Shown piece after piece: positions 25,328 through 34,615 of a DNA stretch of 64,000 nucleotides. This DNA comes from Klebsormidium nitens (lineage: Eukaryota; Plantae; Klebsormidiophyceae). The first letter of the stretch is position 1. Every line of letters starts with the position of its first letter. A program made the position numbers and the translations under genes. The stretch is taken from positions 1-64,000 of the forward strand of contig DF236955.1 in NCBI GenBank assembly GCA_000708835.1, in the 5' to 3' direction. The notes under the pieces are model-generated. The model was not told the DNA's origin. It made no database searches and worked only from the letters and a program-made list of their open reading frames with translations.

Positions 25328-28300
25328 ATGGCACTCAAAGCATCTTGTTCGATGTCTACCGTCTCATTCAGCGGAGTCGCTGTGCGTGCTCCACAGGATT
25401 GGGTCCGTTCCAGCCTGCAGTGGCCAGCCACGTGCATGTATCCTCCTCGGCACATGCACACCGATACCTCCCTGCAACGCTGCCGCACGCCCTGGCACTC
25501 TCCGTGTTGCTCAAAGCGGCAAGAGACTGAGCGGACACTTTCGTTGTTGGGCAACAGGAGCCTTGAGAGAAGGGGCAGCGGTCAGTCTGCCTTGGCGGTG
25601 CCCGGCTCAGAGCATCAAGCAGCTTTTGCCACCACGATAAACAGTCCTGCACGCAGAAGAAGCTCGGAAGTGGGGTCGGGGAGGTATGCCGCCAGCGTGA
25701 TTCGGACAAGGGGAGGGAGGAAGCGCATCCGCCGGGCAAAGGACGGGGATGGGGAGGAAAACGATGACAATATGGATGAGGTGTGTGGGGTTTCATGCCC
25801 AATAGAAAATGACTCCTCTTCCCGTCCCTTGTGTCTTCCTTTCGCTGCCCTCTCCTTAGAGCAAATTGGTCTTTTGGCGGTGGTGTGGCACATAGTGCGC
25901 GCGGATAATCCCGGCTGATGAACTGCAAGATCAGTAGAACAACTGTTCATCATGCCTCGAAATCACAGTAGGAAGGTCTTTGCGCTCAACAAGCAAAGCT
26001 GTGCCGTTGGTGTTTGTTAAGAAGAGCGACACCTGTGGCAACTGTTCTGATTATGCTAATCAAACTCAAGGCTAATTTGTCAGAGGCAGACACGGAGCAG
26101 GAGTTCGTGTCTTATAGAGGTTTTCGGCCCGGGGAGGTTCTCGAAATGTTACTCTCCATTTTCTGGAAGCCTGATTGGTAACTGTAACCAATTCCTTTCA
26201 TGGCTGCCAGCGATACACTTCTCTCGAGGATGCCCCCATCTACGGCAGTGTTCATGGGGACTCTTTTGACTACGATGATCAAAATGAAGTGCCGTCTCCC
26301 CTGGCGGAGGATGCAAGTACAGAGGAGAGAAGTGCGGGGAATGAGGAGCCTGTGGAAGGTGAGCCAGGCATCCGCTTCTGCAAAGTTTGTGAAAGGGTGG
26401 CTGGATGTTGAGTAGCTTTGCAAAGACACCAGTGCAATCTGTATGAAAGCCCTTGGGAAAGGGCATCAAAGTGAAGTTTCCTTTGGGGGAGATCGTGCTT
26501 CCCCTGATGAGCTGACTTCGCAGACTGGGCGTTGAGCTCAAAGTTAGGGTGATTTGACCTAATCTGCTGGCCCAATCGAAAGGACAGTCAACTTAGGCCC
26601 CAAGAATATAAAACGCAAGTAGCGGACTTGTCTTGCCTGTGCCTCCTTCAATCCTCACACTGCTCTTTTGAACAATATCGTTGATTTTCCCGCTTGGCAG
26701 AACAAGAGGCGTCTCCAAGTGACCGGGTGCTTGCCTCCACTTCGGAAGAAAAGGGAACCTCTAAGAACGGGGCGGCCAGCCGTGAGCCAGACATGGAGCA
26801 AAAGGGGATGCTGAGATCAGTAACCGTGTCAACTGCTTTGCCTAAAGAGAAGGTTAAGAAGACGGCAAAAAGCGGGAAGAAGGTAGCGGGTAAGAAGAGT
26901 AGGAGCAGCACGAGTTTGGAAAGTGCAAATGGGGTCAGCAGAAGTGTGGATGAGGACAGAACTGAGGTCACCAGTCAGAAGAAGGGGAAGACGTCAATGG
27001 ACAAGGCTGGGGTTGGTTCTAATACGGAAGCGGAGGGGAGCAGAGCAATCAGGAAAGAGGCCCAAGAGAAGCCTGTGAAAAAGAAGAAGGCCGCTGCGCC
27101 GAAGTTGAAGAGGAGCAAGGCATTCAACGGAAGGATGCGGGAAGGCGAACTGGCAGTGGCAAGGACGGAAACTTTATCCCAAAACGGCGCTCAGCCTTCG
27201 CAAGCGAGCACAGCAGTGGAACAAAAAGAAACCTTATCCCAGAACGGCGCTGAGCCTTCGGAAACGAGCACCGATGTGGAAGAGGAGAGCTTACTGGACC
27301 GCATTGCGAGCAGCTTGCAGGCAGGATCGAGCAGTTCCAAGAGCGACATCAGTAGTGGCGCTCTTCAGTTGAGATTCCATTCGGGTTGTGCATTTGTCGT
27401 GACGGCGGCGGCTGCTAAGCGTGTTGAGGACCTCGTGAAGGAGGGGGAGGCTGCCGGGGTCGGGGCGGGGCTGTTGGGAGCGGCGTCCAGCCTGGTTGAC
27501 AATCTAGTCGATTCTGCGCAGACTGGGGGCGAGGTGCGTAAAACTTTCTTGTGCTCTACTTTGGTGACCTGCTTTCGGCATGATTGCGAAGTGAGTATAC
27601 TTTGTGGTGTTACATTGGGCAGTTGTGTCCTCAGTGCTGCGCTTTGTTCTGGACACGCACTCTCATAAAAGTGCGTTTGTGACATGATCTTGGCCAAGCA
27701 TTGCCGCTTTCGCTGATTGGGTTGCTAGTTAGAGCGGCATGTTCTTTCTGGAGCTGAAGTTAACGTTTATAACTAGGCTGCTTTTTGTGATCGTACGAGG
27801 GCTTCTCTGGGCGCTGAGAAGTGTGCTGTTTAGTTGATGATCCTTTCAGGTGCTTCTTGCTGGGGAAGCACCTAAAACATACTTTTCTACTTTTTTTAAA
27901 TGTTTCGGCTGTTGCGCCCCACTTTCATGCCCCACCTTCTCAAACCCCACGATGACGAACTGAGTTTTTTTTTGACGACGGACTTCTCTTTCGACAAGAT
28001 GGGAATATCAATCCGATTTTGTCAGGTGTAGGGACTACAAAACTTCAGGAACTTGAAATGTATTGGTCAAATTCTAGAAGTTGGAAGCTGGATGATTCCT
28101 CAAGTGTCTCGTACCTGCTTTCGACTGTTGGTCCAATCCTTCGTAGTACGCAAACGGTTTTTCAACACTCGTGTCAACACTCGTGTCTTTCTTCCCGCTT
28201 CCTCGCCACCACAGATTGTGAGCGCGGTTGGGGAGGCTGTGGTTGAGTCTGTGAGTGGGGCAACCGACGCGGTTACGGGGACGGTTAGCCAGCTAAGCGA

Positions 28301-31300
28301 GCAGGTTATGGAGGTGGTTAGCAGCGGGGTAGAGGAGGTGACTGACTCGATCAGCGAGACTGTGGCAAGCCTGGGAGCGCAGGCAAACCCTCGCGCCTCG
28401 TTTGCATTTCTTGTGACTTCATAACTCCGGCAACTTTTCTATCTGTTAAAAGACGAACGGAGTGATACTCGCTCTGCTTGTACGAAGGCATCAGTCTCTG
28501 CACGTCCATTTTGGGGGTGTGAAAACCACACACTTCGCCCCGTTCCCGCTTTGTAACGCGTTTCCCGCTTCAGTCGTTCTGAGTGTTCTATGTTCTTCTT
28601 TCTGCCACATCTCCTTCTGCGCATGCCGGATTCAACACAAGCACAAATCGTTCTGCTGCGACTCTGGCCCTTTCCTCGAAACCACCCAAACAAACCCGCT
28701 GACGTCACTCTGTGCTGGCCAGATCACTGATACCGTTGAATCGGCCGGGGAGTCGGTATCTGCGCTCGTCGAGACTGTTGCCGACACGGTAGACACGGTG
28801 ACGTCGTCAATGGCTGAGACTGTGGACAGTGTGACGTCAACGGTCGCGGAAACAGTGGGTGACGTTGGCGAGGCGGTTGTCAGTCTCATGACGGAAGAAG
28901 AGGAGCTCGGTAGGCCGACATCCGCATCTGGTCTTCCCTCTGCGCTTTTCTTTGCTGCTGTTTGGGAGACGCTGCGTCTCCCTCGTTGCTGGACCCACGT
29001 ATCCGACTGGTGCAAGGTCGACTGGTGAGGTAGTGTTGAAGTCCCCGCGTCAGCGAGGCGAAGGGCTCTGGATGCCAGTCGGATGCAGAAGTCAATATGG
29101 AGTCCTACTTTGAGATCTGGGATGGATCGCCGTCGTCCACTTGGAAACGTCTTGCCTGTGACATTCTACCCGGAATTGAGAGTTGAGCCTTCTGAGGACT
29201 TGGCGCCCGTCAGTCAAAATTTGCACCGTTGTTGACAGACCCTCCTACTTCACTCCAACCGACAGAAATCCTCCGTCCAATGATCTTGATATTGATCTCA
29301 ACCTCTTGGGTTTCTGAATCAAGTCCTCCGTTAGTCGTTATTTCTAAGCACCTGCAGCCCCTGAGATCTAGCCTCTCCCTGCTTTCCTTCAATATAGTGG
29401 GAATCGTACTATCCAACTAGACTCTCTTACTCACTGCCCTGTTCGGCTCCTTCGTTTCGGCGTTACCGAATATGAGGCATTCCGCAAAAAGGCCAATCAC
29501 TGCTTTGCTTCGCATACTCAAACACCAAAACTACCAATTGATTTTAAACAAACAGCCCACGGAAATAAACAGCCCACGGAAATAAACAGGTTACTTCTAA
29601 ATCAAAAATAATAAATCAAATTGACCGAGTTCGAGGCGCTCCGCAACAAGTCTAGCCCACAGCTGCGCGGCCGGACACCCTGCGCCACTCTCAAAACAGC
29701 TCGAATCCAAGTTCTTCGAACCCCTTAGACCTAAACCCCTGGGGTTTGTGAAACCTCGCAGGCGGCACCGAGTTTGAGGCGTTCCGCAACCAAGCCGGCC
29801 CGCAGCTGCGCGGCCGCGCGGAGCTTCGATCTGTGCGCGCTCTCAAAACTGCTCGAACCCTAAAACGGCAAACCCCTTAAACCGCTAAACCTCTGAAACA
29901 TTAACCCGTGCAGGCGACACCGAGTTCGAGGCGTTCCGCAACCAGGCCGGCCCGCAGCTGCGCGGCCGCGCGGGGCTGGACAACCTGCGCGTGCTCTCGG
30001 ACGGCGCGAACCTGATGCAAGTCATCTCCGACGCGTACACGTTCACGCTCAAGCTGCCGCCGCTCCAGTTCTCGCTCGTCGTTGTGGTTCTTCCGCTGCT
30101 CATGAGTTTGGTGTTCACCGGGGTCTACCTGTTAGATATGCAAGGCTTAGTTCCGGACGATAGCGTGCAGAGCATTTATGACGGGCTGCAGAAGGGGGGA
30201 CACGTGGCGGAGGCGCACTGGTACGCGCTGTTCCAGGTGAGGGAGACTGCCAAAGGACCCGCGGTTATTTCCGTTTAGCAGATAACTCTTCAATTTAGCA
30301 ATAGTAAGCTCTAGCAAAAGTAAGCTCCCGCACTAACACTAAAATCCTAACCCACGGAATTACCCGCTCCGCACCCGAACCCATCCTAACCTCCAAACTA
30401 ACCCTACCCGTCCCAGGCTGGTTACCTTACTATTGCTAAAGCTTACTATTGCCAAATTGAAGATTCTTGTTTAGCAGCCCCCTTTGTTCGAGTAATTGGT
30501 TGTTTTTGCCCCAGACCACGTGTTCGTTTATCAAATATACCAAACGGACACATGTTTAACACATTCTGTATATGTTCAATCGGACGTTCCTTTATTGATG
30601 TTCTATTATCCAGTTCTCTTGAAGTGTAGCGTCTCGACTCCGCCACGATCGTGCTTTAAGTCAGGTGGTTACGGACCAGCATACAGGAACCTCACACATA
30701 CCCCGAGTCATTCTTCGACTTGTTCTGCTCACTATAGCCGCACTTGCTCTCTTTAGCGGCTTTGGATGTGCAAACCCGTCTCTTGTCTCCACTTCGAAAG
30801 CCCACTACCAAGTCAATATCAATCGCTCTGTCCGCCTCGCCAGGCGTTATGGTAAGCCTCTGTTAGCATCTGAAGCCATTTTGCCACTCTGACAGGGCAT
30901 TGTGGAGTTACTCTAATTCTCGCTCTGTCTCTCTCTTCAGGTGTTCATGTTCAGCCTCTCTCTGGCGACCGGCTTGCAGCCCGTGCTAGCCCCCGTGACG
31001 CCCTTCTCCTTCGTGGCCGCCAATGTGAATGCGCTCCTCGCCCAGCTGCTTTTCGTCTTCCTCAGTGGCTCCGGCAAGTAATCACACCTATCTGCTTTTC
31101 AGTCCTTCTCTGGCGTCCTTGGTTCCTGCCTCTCAGTTCCTGCCCGGAGCTTCCTGTCGTTCGTTCTTTGCATTTTACAGGGGCATGGTTTGCTCGTCGG
31201 TACCTCCCTCGGTGTCTGGAACCGTTTTCACGTTCTCTCAGTTGGTGTGGCATGCAATATGTGAATGTTGTCCTCAGCATAAGCTCTTCAATCATGGACA

Positions 31301-33767
31301 CTGATCTGACAGCAGAGTCTGAATTTTTCCTGATGGTCCTGTCCCAAGACGACTGGATGGCCCTCAATGGGCTGCCCTCAACAAATCAAAACGACAAGTT
31401 GTTGCTCGGCATCCGCCTCGCATCCGTTCAGCATCTCGTGGGCTTCCATTTTCTCCCAAACCGATTGGTATGCGTCAAGGCTGCCAGTCCTGGAACCTTG
31501 CGCCTACCAAAACATAGAGCAGCGTGGCCGTTATAGAAACAGACTGCGACTAATACAGACAAAGAAGCCCACCTTCCTGTCCATTGACGCAGAATCTTCG
31601 TCTGTTTTGCAGTGTTTGCTCGGTTGTCGCAACGGTCGAGGCCCATCCGGTGCTCTACGGTGGCCCTCATTTGCCCCCCCTGCCACGAGAACCGGTCCGG
31701 CAAAGAGTGGAGTAACAAGTAAGCCTCTCTTTCCGCAGCGACTCGTTTGAGTCCTATTATATCGTAATCTAAAATTCCCTTCAAGGGATGCGGTGCTTGT
31801 TGCGGTGGGGCTTCGACGTTGGTTGGTTGTCTAGAGAGGTTGACCACGAGGTTTGCAAGATTAGATAACTGGCGCGCGGACTCTTCGGTCTTTCAGCGCA
31901 CCAGCGTTGTTGGCATGTGCGCACAGAAGACGCGACCTGCTCTTCATGGGCGGCATGCATCCTAATCTCGCGGCATATAATGCAATTTTCGATTGATGTC
32001 CTTGCTTGTCAGTCCCGTCCGAACCAACGCACGATCTAAAGCGACTGGTTCATTGACCTCTTGGCACAATTGCATCTTCGTCTTAATGGGGTTTCTCATT
32101 GGGCCACCGAAAGAATCTTTTGCCTTCTGCCTGCTGGTGAAGGCACGAGAACTTCGGGACCGGAGCGACGTTGTAGCCCGCAGGCTGGTTCTCTGGTCGC
32201 CGTTCGTGCAGGGTGCTGATTGGACAGGTACGCATTATACTTGTGTCCTCTTTTTTCGGGTTACCTTTTCCCACTCCTTCACGTGGCGCCATCTTGCTGC
32301 GAAGCTCACCTATCTTGTCGCCTTTCGTTGCAGGGTGCTCATGGCCAGGTACGTACTGGTGGGGACGCGCCCCTCGGAGCTGGTGGACGTGAAGGTGGAC
32401 CTGACATTTCACTACAACACGCTGACGCGCAACGGCTCTTACTTCAACCGCCAGGTGTCGCTGAAACTGGTGCGTCGGACAGTGCCACGTGGCAGCTTGT
32501 GAATCACCTAAGCGAAAGTTTGTGCAACTTTCCTGGTCCACCCTGTGCTTCTTGGAGCGATCGAGGGGGCTTACTTTTGACGTTGACAATCTGCGGGCTC
32601 GAAATTTGTGCGAGGAAAAGTTGACTATTGTCGAGCTGGAAGAGCAGCAATGAGATTAAGGGCTGCCAGAGCAACGCCAGAGCAACAAACGATGCAGCTA
32701 TTTTGGGAGTAATTCAATCGATTGAAGAAGCCACAGTCCGCTTCCAAGAGTTCGAGGACTGGTGAGAAAGGGACGTGGAAAAGTGGGCGAACGGAATGGG
32801 GAACCGGAACGGGAACCGGACCGGAAACCGGACCGGAAACGGAAGAACTCATTTGTGCGCAGGTCCGATCGGAGGTGGCCCACCAGACGGGCGGCATGCT
32901 GGTGCGCCACGTCATCGACGAGAGCAGCCCGCTGTACCGGCGGACGGAGGAGATGCTGAAACGGGAAGACGCCATCTTCAAGCTTAGCGTGGTGAGTAGC
33001 ACTCTCATGATGGGTTTTTGATCTGGCATACCATTGTGCCAATGAGGGTGTTCATCGACCGATCGCTTTGGCCTGGCAGAGAGATTGGGCTCTTGAATCG
33101 AAGACGCCCTCTTCAAGCTCAGCGTGGTGATAGCACTTCGTGGAAGGATAATGGGCGTGGCGTTTTTGCGATTGAGATTGTCCTACAGACGATTCGGCCG
33201 AGGCCATTTGGTGTGGCTTAGGAACTGGACACTTTAAATGGAGGAGAATTTTGTATGGGAAAACGCCGTCTTTAAGCTTAGCGTGGTCTTCTACAGCGAA
33301 CTTGTGCGCGGGCGCCGTAGTGTGTGAATGAGGACGTTCGCTGAACGGGGGCGTTTGGTCTCGCAGAGAATCGTGCATTCAAAGAGACTTCCGGTTCCAA
33401 GCTGAGCAGGGTGAAGCTTACTTGCAAAAGGTGCAGTGCTGAGCACAACACTTTGGAACCATTTTGAACCACTCTGCCTGTTCGTGGCAACGAGAGTTGC
33501 GAAAGTGAGGCAGCTTGGATGCGTAACGCCTTCAAGAGGCCGGCTCTCAAAAACGTTCGGTGTGTGCAGGTTGGCCTGGAGCGCTCGTCGATGCAGTCCG
33601 TGTTCGAGTTGCAGTACTACTGTGTGGCTGATGGGGATGTCATTTGGGACGCAGAGTTCGAAGACGTGGTGCTTGTGAACAAGTCTATGCAGAGGGTTAT
33701 TGACCAGTCAAAAGTTAGCCGGTGGAGATCGGTTCCGACCACTGGTTACCGGACTATCAGTGCGTGA
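25328..33767 (+). CDS. Inward-rectifier (Kir/IRK)-fold ion channel with long N-terminal extension; exons 25328-25780, 26211-26358, 26701-27533, 28215-28382 (or -28337), 28723-28909, 29914-30236, 30941-31073, 31613-31718, 32334-32469, 32863-32991, 33570-33767 (~937 aa)
   Basis: M1 (YTFTLKL...LLMSLVFTGVYLLD), pore helix VFMFSLSLATG, M2 ending SGSVFARLSQ, cytoplasmic signature RHVIDESSPLY and WDAEFEDVV; all junction phases consistent. The channel part is more secure than the N-terminal linkage. Confidence 0.8.
27167..27272 (+). repeat. Coding 60-bp duplication (ETLSQNGAQPSQAST / ETLSQNGAEPSETST)
   Basis: Visible in ORF 26694..27668 and in the DNA. Confidence 0.85.
29465..29990 (+). repeat. Three degenerate intronic copies of the 5' end of Kir exon 6 (anchors 29465, 29624, 29767; true exon 29919)
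   Basis: accgagttcgaggcgttccgcaac...cagctgcgcggccg recurs with spacings 159/143/152 bp; identity decays with distance from the exon. Confidence 0.9.
29549..29589 (+). repeat. 17-bp tandem repeat (aaacagcccacggaaat) x2+
   Basis: Direct reading of 29549-29589. Confidence 0.8.
31074..31612 (+). other. GC-AG intron (Kir gene intron 7)
   Basis: Donor G|GCAAGT, phase 1 joins to cag|TG giving LSGSVFARLSQ. Confidence 0.85.
32965..33288 (+). repeat. Two degenerate intronic copies of the 3' end and donor of Kir exon 10 (anchors 32965, 33100, 33259)
   Basis: gaagacgccatcttcaagcttagcgtggtgag / gaagacgccctcttcaagctcagcgtggtgat / gaaaacgccgtctttaagcttagcgtggtc. Confidence 0.9.
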
Positions 33768-34615
33768 AGGTCTCTTGATTCTTGGCCAATAAAGGGTGCT
33801 CAAAGAGCGCGCTTGACCCTTTTTCGATTGCTATCATCGTACTACTAATACTGCAGTGTACTTTGCTAGTGGAAGTCGTTGGTAGAAACTAAGGCAGCCA
33901 TTATTGAGAGAGCTTGTAGGGCAGAGCGATCATTGAGAAAGCTTGTGGGGCACTGCGTAGATAGAGGAGTCAGAGTCAGTGATTTGACAGCACCTTTCAG
34001 CCGCAGCAAGCAGATTCCTTAAATTTGACGTTCTAACATCCCGGCATATATTGATCAGCATCCAGTCCTTCTTGGTGACTCGACGATAACGAATCTGTTT
34101 GAAAAGTTTGCGTCGAGTCGACCCTCAGCAGCAACTTGGTTAGTATCACTCGGATGCTTCGATTGGTGTTCATCAGTGCAGTGCTTAATGGCAAGGGGCT
34201 TGCAAACTGATCGGGTTGCCTGTAGCAAAGGAGATAAACCTGAGTCACATGTGCGTCTATGCAAAACTCTATCACGCGTCAATGCTATGCAGAATTTGAC
34301 ATGATATGTAGTGGGCGGCCATGATCACTGAACACTGCTGCCAGCACCGGTCGGATTGATAAGACCGTCATCATCAACCTATGTGACCACACTGGCGCCG
34401 TTAACTAAGTGTCGATGTCCAGCTTGCGCGCGCACCAGGAAGCGGCGCCACCATAGCATGTCAAGTCTGCGCAAGCTACAAACTTACACAAGATCGCTCA
34501 GCATGCACGATCAACAATCCGAAGCTGTCAAAGTATGACGGCACATATGGCTATCATTATATTTGAGTAAAAGTAATTCATCCTGTTGCATTGTAATTAT
34601 AGCTAGGATGGCCGC

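What the first reader, a model, noticed from the sequence alone, without database searches (positions are those of the whole stretch)
25328..33767. Kir-fold channel with no GYG selectivity filter and a probable plastid transit peptide
The fold signatures are clear (FARLSQ after M2, HVIDESSPLY), but the filter reads FSLSLATGLQPVLAP where K+-selective Kir/KirBac have T-[IV]-G-Y-G, so selectivity is probably altered or lost. The N-terminus (MALKASCSMSTVSFSGVAVRAP..., Ser/Arg-rich, few acidic residues) resembles a chloroplast transit peptide, followed by about 500 aa of disordered and amphipathic sequence. True Kir channels are not part of the angiosperm K+ channel set, so this may be an uncharacterised organellar cation channel of early streptophytes.
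Basis: partly seen in the sequence, partly recalled or inferred. Interest (0 to 1): 0.72.

Follow-up and report, generated by a model that had tools for sequence, protein, structure and literature searches.

The report
Plant Kir-fold channel without potassium filter
This is an expressed 11-exon gene of the alga Klebsormidium nitens for a Kir/KirBac-shaped membrane channel that has a different but strongly conserved pore loop in place of the potassium filter, fused to a long acidic N-terminal arm; the family runs from streptophyte algae to gymnosperms, none turned up in flowering plants, and I found no study of it.

Summary
The stretch is the public gene KFL_000060070 of Klebsormidium nitens, annotated "hypothetical protein". 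Spliced contigs from four studies fix exons 4-11 and join the N-terminal exons to the channel exons in one transcript.

The last ~340 residues are a Kir/KirBac subunit:
- Pfam IRK_C scores above its cut-off.
- The family profile hits KirBac1.1 at E 1.5e-18.
- The AlphaFold model hits KirBac3.1 at Foldseek E 5e-23.

The K+ signature T-x-G-Y-G is replaced by T-G-L-Q-P. This is not decay. In 27 orthologues, from Klebsormidium and zygnematophytes through mosses, liverworts, lycophytes and ferns to Ginkgo, the loop (consensus STGLQPELAP) and M2 are the most conserved parts. No angiosperm, chlorophyte or prokaryote was found.

The ~550-residue N-terminal extension is conserved too. It holds a basic Ser/Thr-rich presequence, a conserved GRYSGAVHG plus Arg-rich motif, disordered stretches, and a ~100-residue acidic amphipathic helix with 11/3 periodicity.

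The most likely function is a gated cation channel that is not K+-selective, as shown experimentally for bacterial NirBac channels.

This scan already noted paralogous GYG-less Kir genes elsewhere in this genome.

The parts
25328..25780 (+). Exon 1. It holds the first in-frame ATG at 25328 (the public model starts at ATG 25436), a basic Ser/Thr-rich presequence, the conserved GSGRYAASV plus Arg-rich motif (about 25673-25735), and the start of the acidic stretch.
   Evidence: ORF and sequence. P0055 residues 1-115 match 25436-25780 at 100%. The donor GAG|GTGTGT at 25781 is read from the sequence. The sister-species locus L001 keeps the frame open and keeps an ATG beside 25328. The 5' end of the mRNA was not checked.
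26211..26358 (+). Exon 2, an acidic disordered stretch.
   Evidence: The P0055 match is. The AG acceptor and GT donor are read. No reads were laid here.
26701..27533 (+). Exon 3, a Lys-rich and Ser/Thr-rich disordered region.
   Evidence: P0055 match. The loose end of the contigs at 28213 equals the last 30 nt before 27532, so the 27533|28215 joint is shown in RNA.
28215..28382 (+). Exon 4, an alternatively spliced cassette and the first part of the acidic 11/3 amphipathic helix. It has a GT donor after 28337 (used in the public model) or a GC donor after 28382. The exon is also skipped in some contigs, and the following intron is retained in others.
   Evidence: Joints 28335>28721 and 28379>28720, an exon 3>5 loose end at 28717, and an unspliced contig piece 28213-28908. 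Boundaries adjusted. Both forms keep the frame.
28723..28909 (+). Exon 5, the rest of the acidic amphipathic repeat (VADTVDTVTSS-type 11-mers) and the EEEEL end.
   Evidence: Joint 28908>29913 in all 4 runs. In P0055 residues 443-545 there are 22 D/E and 0 K/R, and hydrophobicity peaks at period 3.667. Weak Apolipoprotein and Perilipin hits.
29914..30236 (+). Exon 6: the TEFEAF acidic motif, the N-terminal segment, the slide helix, M1 and the turret.
   Evidence: Joints. A search with this exon alone found 35 relatives. The model has helices at 40-52 and 56-79 of the domain. The profile aligns M1 to KirBac1.1 residues 45-84.
30941..31073 (+). Exon 7: the pore helix, the filter-equivalent loop and most of M2. 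A GC-AG intron follows.
   Evidence: Joints 30233>30938 and 31072>31612 in all 4 runs. It is 71-75% identical to orthologues.
30968..30994 (+). Codons of T-G-L-Q-P-V-L-A-P, which lie where Kir/KirBac have T-V-G-Y-G-D-M-H-P.
   Evidence: and the HMM alignment. Column identity of this loop in the orthogroup is 0.90, against 0.73 for M1 and 0.81 for the C-terminal domain. The loop is identical in sister species L001.
31613..31718 (+). Exon 8: the end of M2 (VFARLSQ, which carries the Phe that aligns with the bundle-crossing Phe of KirBac1.1) and the linker to the cytoplasmic domain.
32334..32469 (+). Exon 9, the first beta strands of the IRK_C domain.
32863..32991 (+). Exon 10, the IRK_C core with HVIDESSPLY.
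   Evidence: (IRK_C E 0.021 on this exon alone).
33570..33767 (+). Exon 11, the end of IRK_C and the stop codon.

Best explanation
The stretch is gene KFL_000060070 of Klebsormidium nitens. It is an expressed 11-exon gene for a protein of about 890-940 residues.

Shown:
- The last ~340 residues form a Kir/KirBac-type subunit: an N-terminal segment, slide helix, M1, pore helix, re-entrant loop, M2 with the conserved Phe of the bundle crossing, and the beta-rich IRK_C cytoplasmic domain.
- The K+ signature T-x-G-Y-G is replaced by T-G-L-Q-P. Both glycines that let the K+ filter adopt its carbonyl-lined shape are gone.
- This substitute loop and M2 are the most conserved parts of an orthogroup that spans Klebsormidium to Ginkgo.

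Inferred:
- Four subunits form a gated pore that still conducts. It passes small cations with little or no preference for K+ over Na+, as measured for the bacterial NirBac channels, which are Kir homologues with foreign pore loops.
- The ring of Gln side chains, and in most orthologues a Glu two residues later (Val in Klebsormidium), would line the narrow part.
- Gating is expected from the N-side, through the IRK_C domain and the conserved N-terminal arm. That arm has an acidic DSDDEFE-type motif and a ~100-150-residue acidic amphipathic helix with 11/3 periodicity, the periodicity of helices that lie flat on lipid surfaces. Exon 4 splicing varies the helix length.
- The variable, basic, Ser/Thr-rich presequence ends at a conserved x-A|[GS]-[LIV]-G-R motif, which suggests import into an organelle and cleavage there. 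I favour the plastid.
- An organelle location also fits the topology, because a Kir subunit needs its N-terminus on the cytoplasm-equivalent (stromal or matrix) side.
For: - Gene model and expression.
- Kir membership of the cytoplasmic domain: IRK_C 29.5 bits against a cut-off of 22.5.
- Whole-domain homology: family profile against PDB sequences gives KirBac1.1 E 1.5e-18, KirBac3.1 E 7e-18 and animal Kir E 1e-8 to 1e-3, covering M1 and the pore helix through the C-terminal domain.
- Fold: model pLDDT 80. Foldseek finds KirBac3.1 at E 5e-23 and Kir2.2/Kir6.2 at about E 1e-18. The nearest ESM Atlas shapes are bacterial IRK families with TM 0.64-0.74.
- Loop conservation: STGLQPELAPLSPY is nearly invariant in 27 orthologues. 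Column identity is 0.90 for the loop and 0.91 for M2.
- Architecture: it is kept in independent gene models and transcript assemblies of more than 20 species.
- Tree: a separate clade with long N-terminal extensions, with an order close to the species tree.
- Acidic 11/3 helix.
- Presequence and conserved site. The frame stays open upstream of the annotated Met in a sister species.
- Functional precedent: NirBac channels are non-selective for Na+, K+ and Rb+ and are activated by the anionic lipid POPG (PMC4607889).
Against: - There are no functional data for any member.
- Pfam's transmembrane model PF01007 does not hit the protein, even at E 1.
- The model is a monomer, so pore width and lining are not known.
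- Klebsormidium lacks the Glu that most orthologues carry after Q-P, so its pore may behave differently from the rest.
- The amphipathic helix has no basic residues, unlike the apolipoprotein and perilipin helices it weakly matches, so membrane binding is uncertain.
- Targeting: no predictor could be run and no proteomic or imaging evidence was found. Several orthologues have Arg at -2 of the putative site, which also fits mitochondrial processing.
Confidence: 0.6

Rival explanations
1. The protein is a Kir-fold channel as described, but it is not organellar. It sits in the plasma membrane or an endomembrane, and the N-terminal 550 residues are simply a cytosolic regulatory arm. The conserved GRYSGAVHG plus Arg-rich motif would then be a binding or sorting signal, not the start of a mature protein.
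For: - No localisation evidence of any kind was found.
- The public model starts at a Met without a typical transit-peptide beginning.
- Some annotated orthologues (Mesotaenium, Ginkgo, one Adiantum model) have acidic N-termini, although these may be mis-modelled starts.
- All characterised eukaryotic Kir channels are in the plasma membrane or endomembranes (general knowledge).
Against: - In about 20 orthologues a variable, basic, Ser/Thr-rich stretch of 35-85 residues with few acidic residues precedes the same conserved motif. That motif follows x-A, which is the usual layout of a cleaved presequence.
- The frame upstream of the annotated Met stays open in a sister species.
Confidence: 0.3
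2. The pore no longer conducts. The protein is a channel-derived scaffold, sensor or regulator, and the pore loop is conserved for structural or binding reasons.
For: Both filter glycines are lost and a proline sits in the loop. No flux data exist. Pfam's transmembrane model does not match.
Against: - The loop and M2 are the most conserved parts across roughly the whole streptophyte radiation.
- The pore helix, the M2 Phe that aligns with the bundle-crossing Phe of KirBac1.1, the slide helix and IRK_C are all kept.
- NirBac channels with equally foreign loops do conduct (PMC4607889).
Confidence: 0.15
3. The channel is still K+-selective, using a filter built differently from T-x-G-Y-G.
For: The Thr at the base of the filter is invariant, and the distance from that Thr to the following Pro is the same as in KirBac1.1.
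Against: Loss of either filter glycine abolishes K+ selectivity in studied K+ channels, for example the weaver mutation of GIRK2 (general knowledge). NirBac channels with non-canonical loops are non-selective (PMC4607889).
Confidence: 0.08
4. The long protein is an annotation artefact: two neighbouring genes (N-terminal disordered protein and Kir-like channel) wrongly joined.
For: Intron 4 is retained in part of the transcripts, which puts a stop at 28422. That isoform would encode only the N-terminal part.
Against: - The joint 28908>29913 is present in all four runs.
- One contig spans from upstream of exon 4 into exon 7, and other contigs run from exon 5 to the 3' end.
- All frames connect.
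- The same fused architecture occurs in more than 20 species, including complete transcript ORFs.
Confidence: 0.02

Closest known systems
KirBac1.1 / KirBac3.1 (prokaryotic inward rectifier K+ channels; PDB 1p7b, 1xl4 and others)
   Same: They share the architecture and fold: slide helix, M1, pore helix, loop, M2 with the VFAR(F/L) end, and the IRK_C domain with the HVIDE-SSPL motif. They are the best sequence hits (E 1.5e-18) and the best structure hits (E 5e-23; Atlas TM up to 0.74). They are closer to this protein than the animal Kir channels are.
   Different: KirBac channels have T-V-G-Y-G and are K+-selective. They are about 300-330 residues long with no N-terminal extension, and they are bacterial. 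Here the loop reads T-G-L-Q-P, the protein carries about 550 extra N-terminal residues, and the family is confined to streptophytes.
NirBac channels (Zubcevic et al. 2015, Sci Rep 5:15305, PMC4607889)
   Same: They are Kir/KirBac homologues in every domain except the pore loop, which is non-canonical. Experiments show they are non-selective for monovalent cations and are activated by anionic lipid. They are the best functional analogy. NirBac2.1's TTGTD resembles the STGVD of the Klebsormidium paralogue KFL_004050010.
   Different: They are prokaryotic (Anaeromyxobacter, Gemmatimonas), few in number, and their loops differ from one another. The plant loop STGLQPELAP is a different sequence and is conserved across a whole orthogroup.
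Animal Kir1-Kir7 channels (KCNJ family)
   Same: The fold and the IRK_C domain (E 1e-8 to 1e-3; Foldseek about E 1e-18).
   Different: Animal Kir channels have a canonical G-Y-G or G-F-G filter and are regulated by PIP2 through a basic cluster after M2. Here that cluster reads SQPSQPVR in most orthologues. They sit in the plasma membrane and have no acidic amphipathic arm.
Non-selective relatives of K+ channels with altered filters (NaK, CNG, HCN)
   Same: They are tetrameric P-loop channels in which changes to T-x-G-Y-G remove K+ selectivity. CNG filters (T-I-G-E-T-P-P-P, from general knowledge) also pair a Glu with prolines after the filter.
   Different: They belong to other subfamilies with 6 TM segments or other gating domains, and their loops still resemble the K+ signature, which this one does not.
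11-mer amphipathic helices of apolipoproteins, perilipins and apolipophorin-III
   Same: Weak Pfam hits below the cut-offs and the same 11/3 hydrophobic periodicity.
   Different: The plant repeat has no Lys or Arg and more than 20% Asp and Glu. No Pfam cut-off is reached, so this is a resemblance in periodicity only and not membership.

Membership tests
Kir/KirBac (IRK-C family; Pfam IRK + IRK_C) | Beta-rich cytoplasmic C-terminal domain (PF17655 IRK_C) | tested here: met
   P0055, which is this gene's product, scores 29.5 bits (E 6.8e-7) against the curated cut-off of 22.5 and covers profile positions 24-162 of 174. Exon 10 alone gives E 0.021.
Kir/KirBac (IRK-C family; Pfam IRK + IRK_C) | Two-helix pore module with slide helix and pore helix, seen at the level of fold | tested here: met
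   The model has helices for the slide helix, M1, pore helix and M2. Foldseek aligns about 306 columns to KirBac3.1 at E 5e-23. The profile aligns M1 and the pore helix through M2 to KirBac1.1.
Kir/KirBac (IRK-C family; Pfam IRK + IRK_C) | Match to Pfam's transmembrane model PF01007 (IRK) | tested here: not met
   No PF01007 hit for P0055 or for its residues 540-886, even at E 1. Only a short paralogue, P0027, gives E 0.18.
Kir/KirBac (IRK-C family; Pfam IRK + IRK_C) | K+ selectivity signature T-x-G-[YF]-G in the pore loop | tested here: not met
   The loop reads T-G-L-Q-P-V in the window and T-G-L-[QE]-P-[EDA] in the orthologues. No member of the three plant subfamilies has G-Y-G or G-F-G.
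Kir/KirBac (IRK-C family; Pfam IRK + IRK_C) | Tetramer that conducts K+ with inward rectification | not testable with these tools
   Only monomer models are available, and there is no electrophysiology.
NirBac (non-selective Kir homologues) | Kir/KirBac homology in all domains, with a non-canonical pore loop | tested here: met
   for the homology; for the loop.
NirBac (non-selective Kir homologues) | Sequence kinship with NirBac1.1, 1.2 or 2.1 beyond the general KirBac similarity | not tested
   No NirBac sequence could be fetched. The genome-contig scan with family motifs found no prokaryotic relative. Only the NirBac2.1 filter TTGTD is known, from the paper.
NirBac (non-selective Kir homologues) | Measured non-selective monovalent cation flux | not testable with these tools
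   This needs liposome flux or bilayer recordings.
Nuclear-encoded plastid proteins with a cleavable transit peptide | N-terminal presequence that is Ser/Thr-rich, basic, poor in Asp/Glu and variable in sequence, followed by a conserved mature start | tested here: met
   The first 60 residues of the window protein from ATG 25328 hold 2 D/E, 6 K/R and 14 S/T. About 20 orthologues show a variable stretch of 35-85 residues and then x-A|[GS][LIV]GR[YF]SG[AG][VI]HG. The composition alone does not separate plastid from mitochondrial presequences.
Nuclear-encoded plastid proteins with a cleavable transit peptide | Prediction by a trained classifier, or experimental import or localisation | not testable with these tools
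   No TargetP-type tool was available. No paper names the gene or its Marchantia or Physcomitrium orthologues.

The most novel reading that the evidence does not exclude
The gene represents a streptophyte-wide channel family, not found in flowering plants, that is imported into an organelle. Its own conserved filter (STGLQPE) gives a previously undescribed cation selectivity. An acidic 11/3 amphipathic arm gates the pore by sensing the membrane surface or stromal divalent cations. It would be a new molecular player in plastid ion homeostasis of algae, bryophytes, ferns and gymnosperms.
Probability: 0.3. Interest if true: 0.78.

Novelty: new variant of a known kind. Interest (0 to 1): 0.62.

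Why it matters
- Plant inventories: the one inventory I checked (PMC3410407, Gomez-Porras 2012) never mentions Kir, and the plant reviews that my searches returned use 'Kir-like' only for KCO3, a one-pore channel of the TPK family. Here is a whole family of genuine Kir-fold proteins with at least three subfamilies, already present in Klebsormidium, kept through gymnosperms and not found in angiosperms.
- Filter design: the pore loop is not a decayed K+ filter. It is a distinct motif and the best-conserved part of the protein. That makes it a natural experiment in how a tetrameric P-loop scaffold can carry another filter, extending the NirBac finding from a few bacteria to a large eukaryotic clade.
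- Organelle transport: if the protein is organellar, it would give a molecular identity to a cation pathway of plastids or mitochondria in non-flowering plants.
- Tractability: Marchantia (Mp4g12110) and Physcomitrium offer knock-outs and imaging, and the channel domain is similar enough to KirBac to be purified and assayed in the same way.

Tried and rejected
- Exon-by-exon Pfam and PDB sequence searches were nearly blind. Only exon 10 gave weak IRK_C and KirBac1.1 signals, so single exons cannot settle membership.
- The joined spliced model of the window was never built or searched. This applies to the 937-residue form with the upstream start and the long exon 4. I used the public protein P0055, which a search returned and which matches the exons.
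- The genome-contig scan with family motifs found no prokaryotic relative.
- Nine literature searches found no paper on this plant family or on its gene identifiers.
- I could not verify the earlier agent's statement that the family was 'first seen in moss in 2004'.
- The ESM Atlas search with the N-terminal repeat region gave only noise, with TM below 0.3.
- Codon-position analysis of the 36 codons upstream of the annotated Met showed no third-position excess. It neither proves nor disproves that they are coding.
- The gene-fusion artefact and chance resemblance to Kir are rejected.
- A cleaved secretory signal peptide is rejected on topology. It would put the slide helix and IRK_C domain on the wrong side of a two-helix Kir subunit. 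This is an inference.
- The careful tree search did not finish, so the tree cited is the quick IQ-TREE run. The two long-branch rows (KFL_004050010 and one Selaginella protein) are not reliably placed.
Full report
**What is there.** The stretch lies in a eukaryotic, intron-rich region of about 50-59% G+C. Translating all + frames shows the quoted motifs in separate open segments. I laid contigs of four public runs from four studies on 27860-33850. The run type is only guessed by the index, but the contigs lack eight segments with GT-AG or GC-AG ends, so they derive from spliced RNA.

After adjusting for shared bases, the exons are:

| Exon | Coordinates | Note |
|---|---|---|
| 3 | ends 27533 | |
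| 4 | 28215-28337 or 28215-28382 | second donor is GC |
| 5 | 28723-28909 | |
| 6 | 29914-30236 | |
| 7 | 30941-31073 | followed by a GC-AG intron |
| 8 | 31613-31718 | |
| 9 | 32334-32469 | |
| 10 | 32863-32991 | |
| 11 | 33570-33767 | includes the stop codon |

All phases connect. Exon 4 is a cassette. Both donors are used, it is skipped in one contig, and the following intron is retained in part of the transcripts, which puts a stop at 28422.

One 2056-nt contig runs from about 1 kb upstream of exon 4 into exon 7. Other contigs run from exon 5 to the 3' end. The N-terminal exons and the channel exons therefore belong to one mRNA.

**Identity.** A search of 1.84 billion representatives with exon 6 alone gave 35 hits, many of them proteins of 700-1100 residues that match only near their C-terminus. 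A word search seeded with one of these returned named orthologues. One of them, P0055, is 'hypothetical protein KFL_000060070 [Klebsormidium nitens]' (886 aa; UniRef calls it an IRK C-terminal domain-containing protein).
- It matches the window exon by exon, at 100% in the best-aligned exons, with the splice sites inferred above.
- It also fixes exons 1-3 as 25436-25780, 26211-26358 and 26701-27533 (sites read).
- P0055 served as the referenceable product.

**Kir fold, no K+ filter.**
- Pfam: exon by exon, only a weak IRK_C signal appears on exon 10. P0055 passes the IRK_C cut-off (29.5 bits against 22.5). Pfam's transmembrane model PF01007 does not hit.
- Profile search: a profile of 32 family members (A1) finds KirBac1.1 at E 1.5e-18, KirBac3.1 at E 7e-18 and animal Kir channels at E 1e-8 to 1e-3. 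The alignment covers M1 and the pore helix through the C-terminal domain.
- Structure: the AlphaFold model of residues 540-886 (pLDDT 80) matches KirBac3.1 at Foldseek E 5e-23 over about 306 columns, and Kir2.2 and Kir6.2 at about E 1e-18. The nearest ESM Atlas shapes are bacterial IRK families.
- Pore loop: after the pore helix the loop reads T-G-L-Q-P-V-L-A-P where KirBac1.1 has T-V-G-Y-G-D-M-H-P. The Thr-to-Pro spacing is the same, but both filter glycines are gone.

**A conserved family, not a decayed gene.** Orthologues occur in these groups:
- Streptophyte algae: Mesotaenium, Spirogloea, Closterium.
- Mosses: Ceratodon, Physcomitrium, Sphagnum.
- Liverworts: Marchantia, Riccia, Calypogeia.
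- Lycophytes: Selaginella, Diphasiastrum.
- Ferns and gymnosperms: Adiantum, Ceratopteris, Ginkgo.

The loop is nearly invariant across them, with consensus FMFSLSLSTGLQPELAPLSPY. Column identity by segment is 0.90 for the loop, 0.91 for M2, 0.81 for the C-terminal domain, 0.73 for M1 and 0.57 for the turret.

A sister Klebsormidium species (locus L001) has the same loop. It conserves only the exons, at 76-92% nucleotide identity.

A second search in the 190-600-residue range found two further subfamilies:
- STTFGGS, in mosses, Selaginella, ferns, Ginkgo and Cryptomeria.
- A short form with members in Klebsormidium (KFL_003650080) and mosses.

KFL_004050010, with STGVDP, is a further divergent Klebsormidium paralogue.

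A quick maximum-likelihood tree separates the long-extension clade that contains this gene (SH-aLRT 97) from the others. Two long branches in it are unplaced.

None of the 95 hits is from an angiosperm, a chlorophyte or a prokaryote, and a scan of 185,579 prokaryotic genomes with family motifs found nothing.

Earlier notes of this scan list several GYG-less Kir genes elsewhere in this genome, and one follow-up reached a similar reading for a paralogue. So the scan has met this superfamily before on other DNA.

**The N-terminal extension.** All orthologues share the same order of parts:
- A variable, basic, Ser/Thr-rich start of 35-85 residues with few acidic residues. It is longer in Klebsormidium.
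- A conserved x-A|[GS]-[LIV]-G-R-[YF]-S-G-[AG]-[VI]-H-G motif followed by an Arg cluster.
- Acidic and Lys-rich disordered stretches of variable length.
- An acidic helix-like repeat of 100-150 residues.
- A DSDDEFE-type motif just before the slide helix.

In P0055 the repeat (residues 443-545) has 22 Asp/Glu and no Lys/Arg. Its hydrophobicity spectrum peaks sharply at 3.667 residues, the 11/3 periodicity of surface-lying amphipathic helices, and four other species show the same peak. Hits to Apolipoprotein, ApoLp-III and Perilipin stay below their cut-offs.

**Targeting.**
- For a cleaved organellar presequence: the layout is a variable presequence followed by a conserved start after x-A. The two-helix Kir topology needs the N-terminus on the cytoplasm-equivalent side, which argues against a secretory signal peptide.
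- For the longer start: the sister species keeps the frame open, without indels, from an ATG beside 25328, whereas an indel occurs just upstream. 21 of 36 residues are identical there.
- Limits: no predictor or localisation data were available. Arg at -2 in several ferns also fits mitochondrial processing. My only reads call did not cover the 5' end.

**Mechanism.** Shown: this is a Kir/KirBac-fold subunit with its gating parts intact and a conserved non-K+ loop. Inferred: it forms a tetrameric, gated cation pore without K+ selectivity. The closest functional precedent is the NirBac group. These are bacterial Kir homologues with foreign pore loops that conduct Na+, K+ and Rb+ alike, do not pass Ca2+, and need anionic lipid (PMC4607889). 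I found no paper on the plant family.

**Verdict.** This is a new variant of a known kind: publicly annotated only as hypothetical, apparently unstudied and experimentally tractable.

Noticed in passing
window 29608-29682 and 29751-29825 (intron 5), compared with 29903-29977: Intron 5 holds two tandem decoy copies, about 150 nt apart, of the acceptor site plus the first ~64 nt of exon 6. One copy is 91% identical to the real site, acceptor included. All four RNA runs splice to the real acceptor at 29914. Use of the decoy at about 29762 would run into a stop. The sister-species locus L001 also shows repeated matches here.
   Followed up: partly
window 28383-28722 and 31074-31612: Two GC-AG introns sit in one gene: the alternative donor of exon 4 and the constitutive intron 7. 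Both are supported by spliced contigs.
   Followed up: partly
L001 7114-7590, compared with window 27156-27284: The sister Klebsormidium species has about 350 extra nucleotides inside exon 3, in the disordered Lys/Ser-rich region with ETLSQNGA-type repeats, and the frame stays open. The length of this arm therefore changes quickly.
   Followed up: no
window 28213-28908 in run X1: An isoform that retains intron 4 would stop at 28422. It would encode only the N-terminal arm without the channel. Its share could not be measured from contigs.
   Followed up: no
P0064 (KFL_004050010), elsewhere in the same genome: The pore loop of this Klebsormidium paralogue, MSTGVDP, resembles the TTGTD filter reported for the bacterial NirBac2.1 channel (PMC4607889). 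This hints that the [ST]-T-G-x-[DQ] type of loop may be older than the plant family.
   Followed up: no
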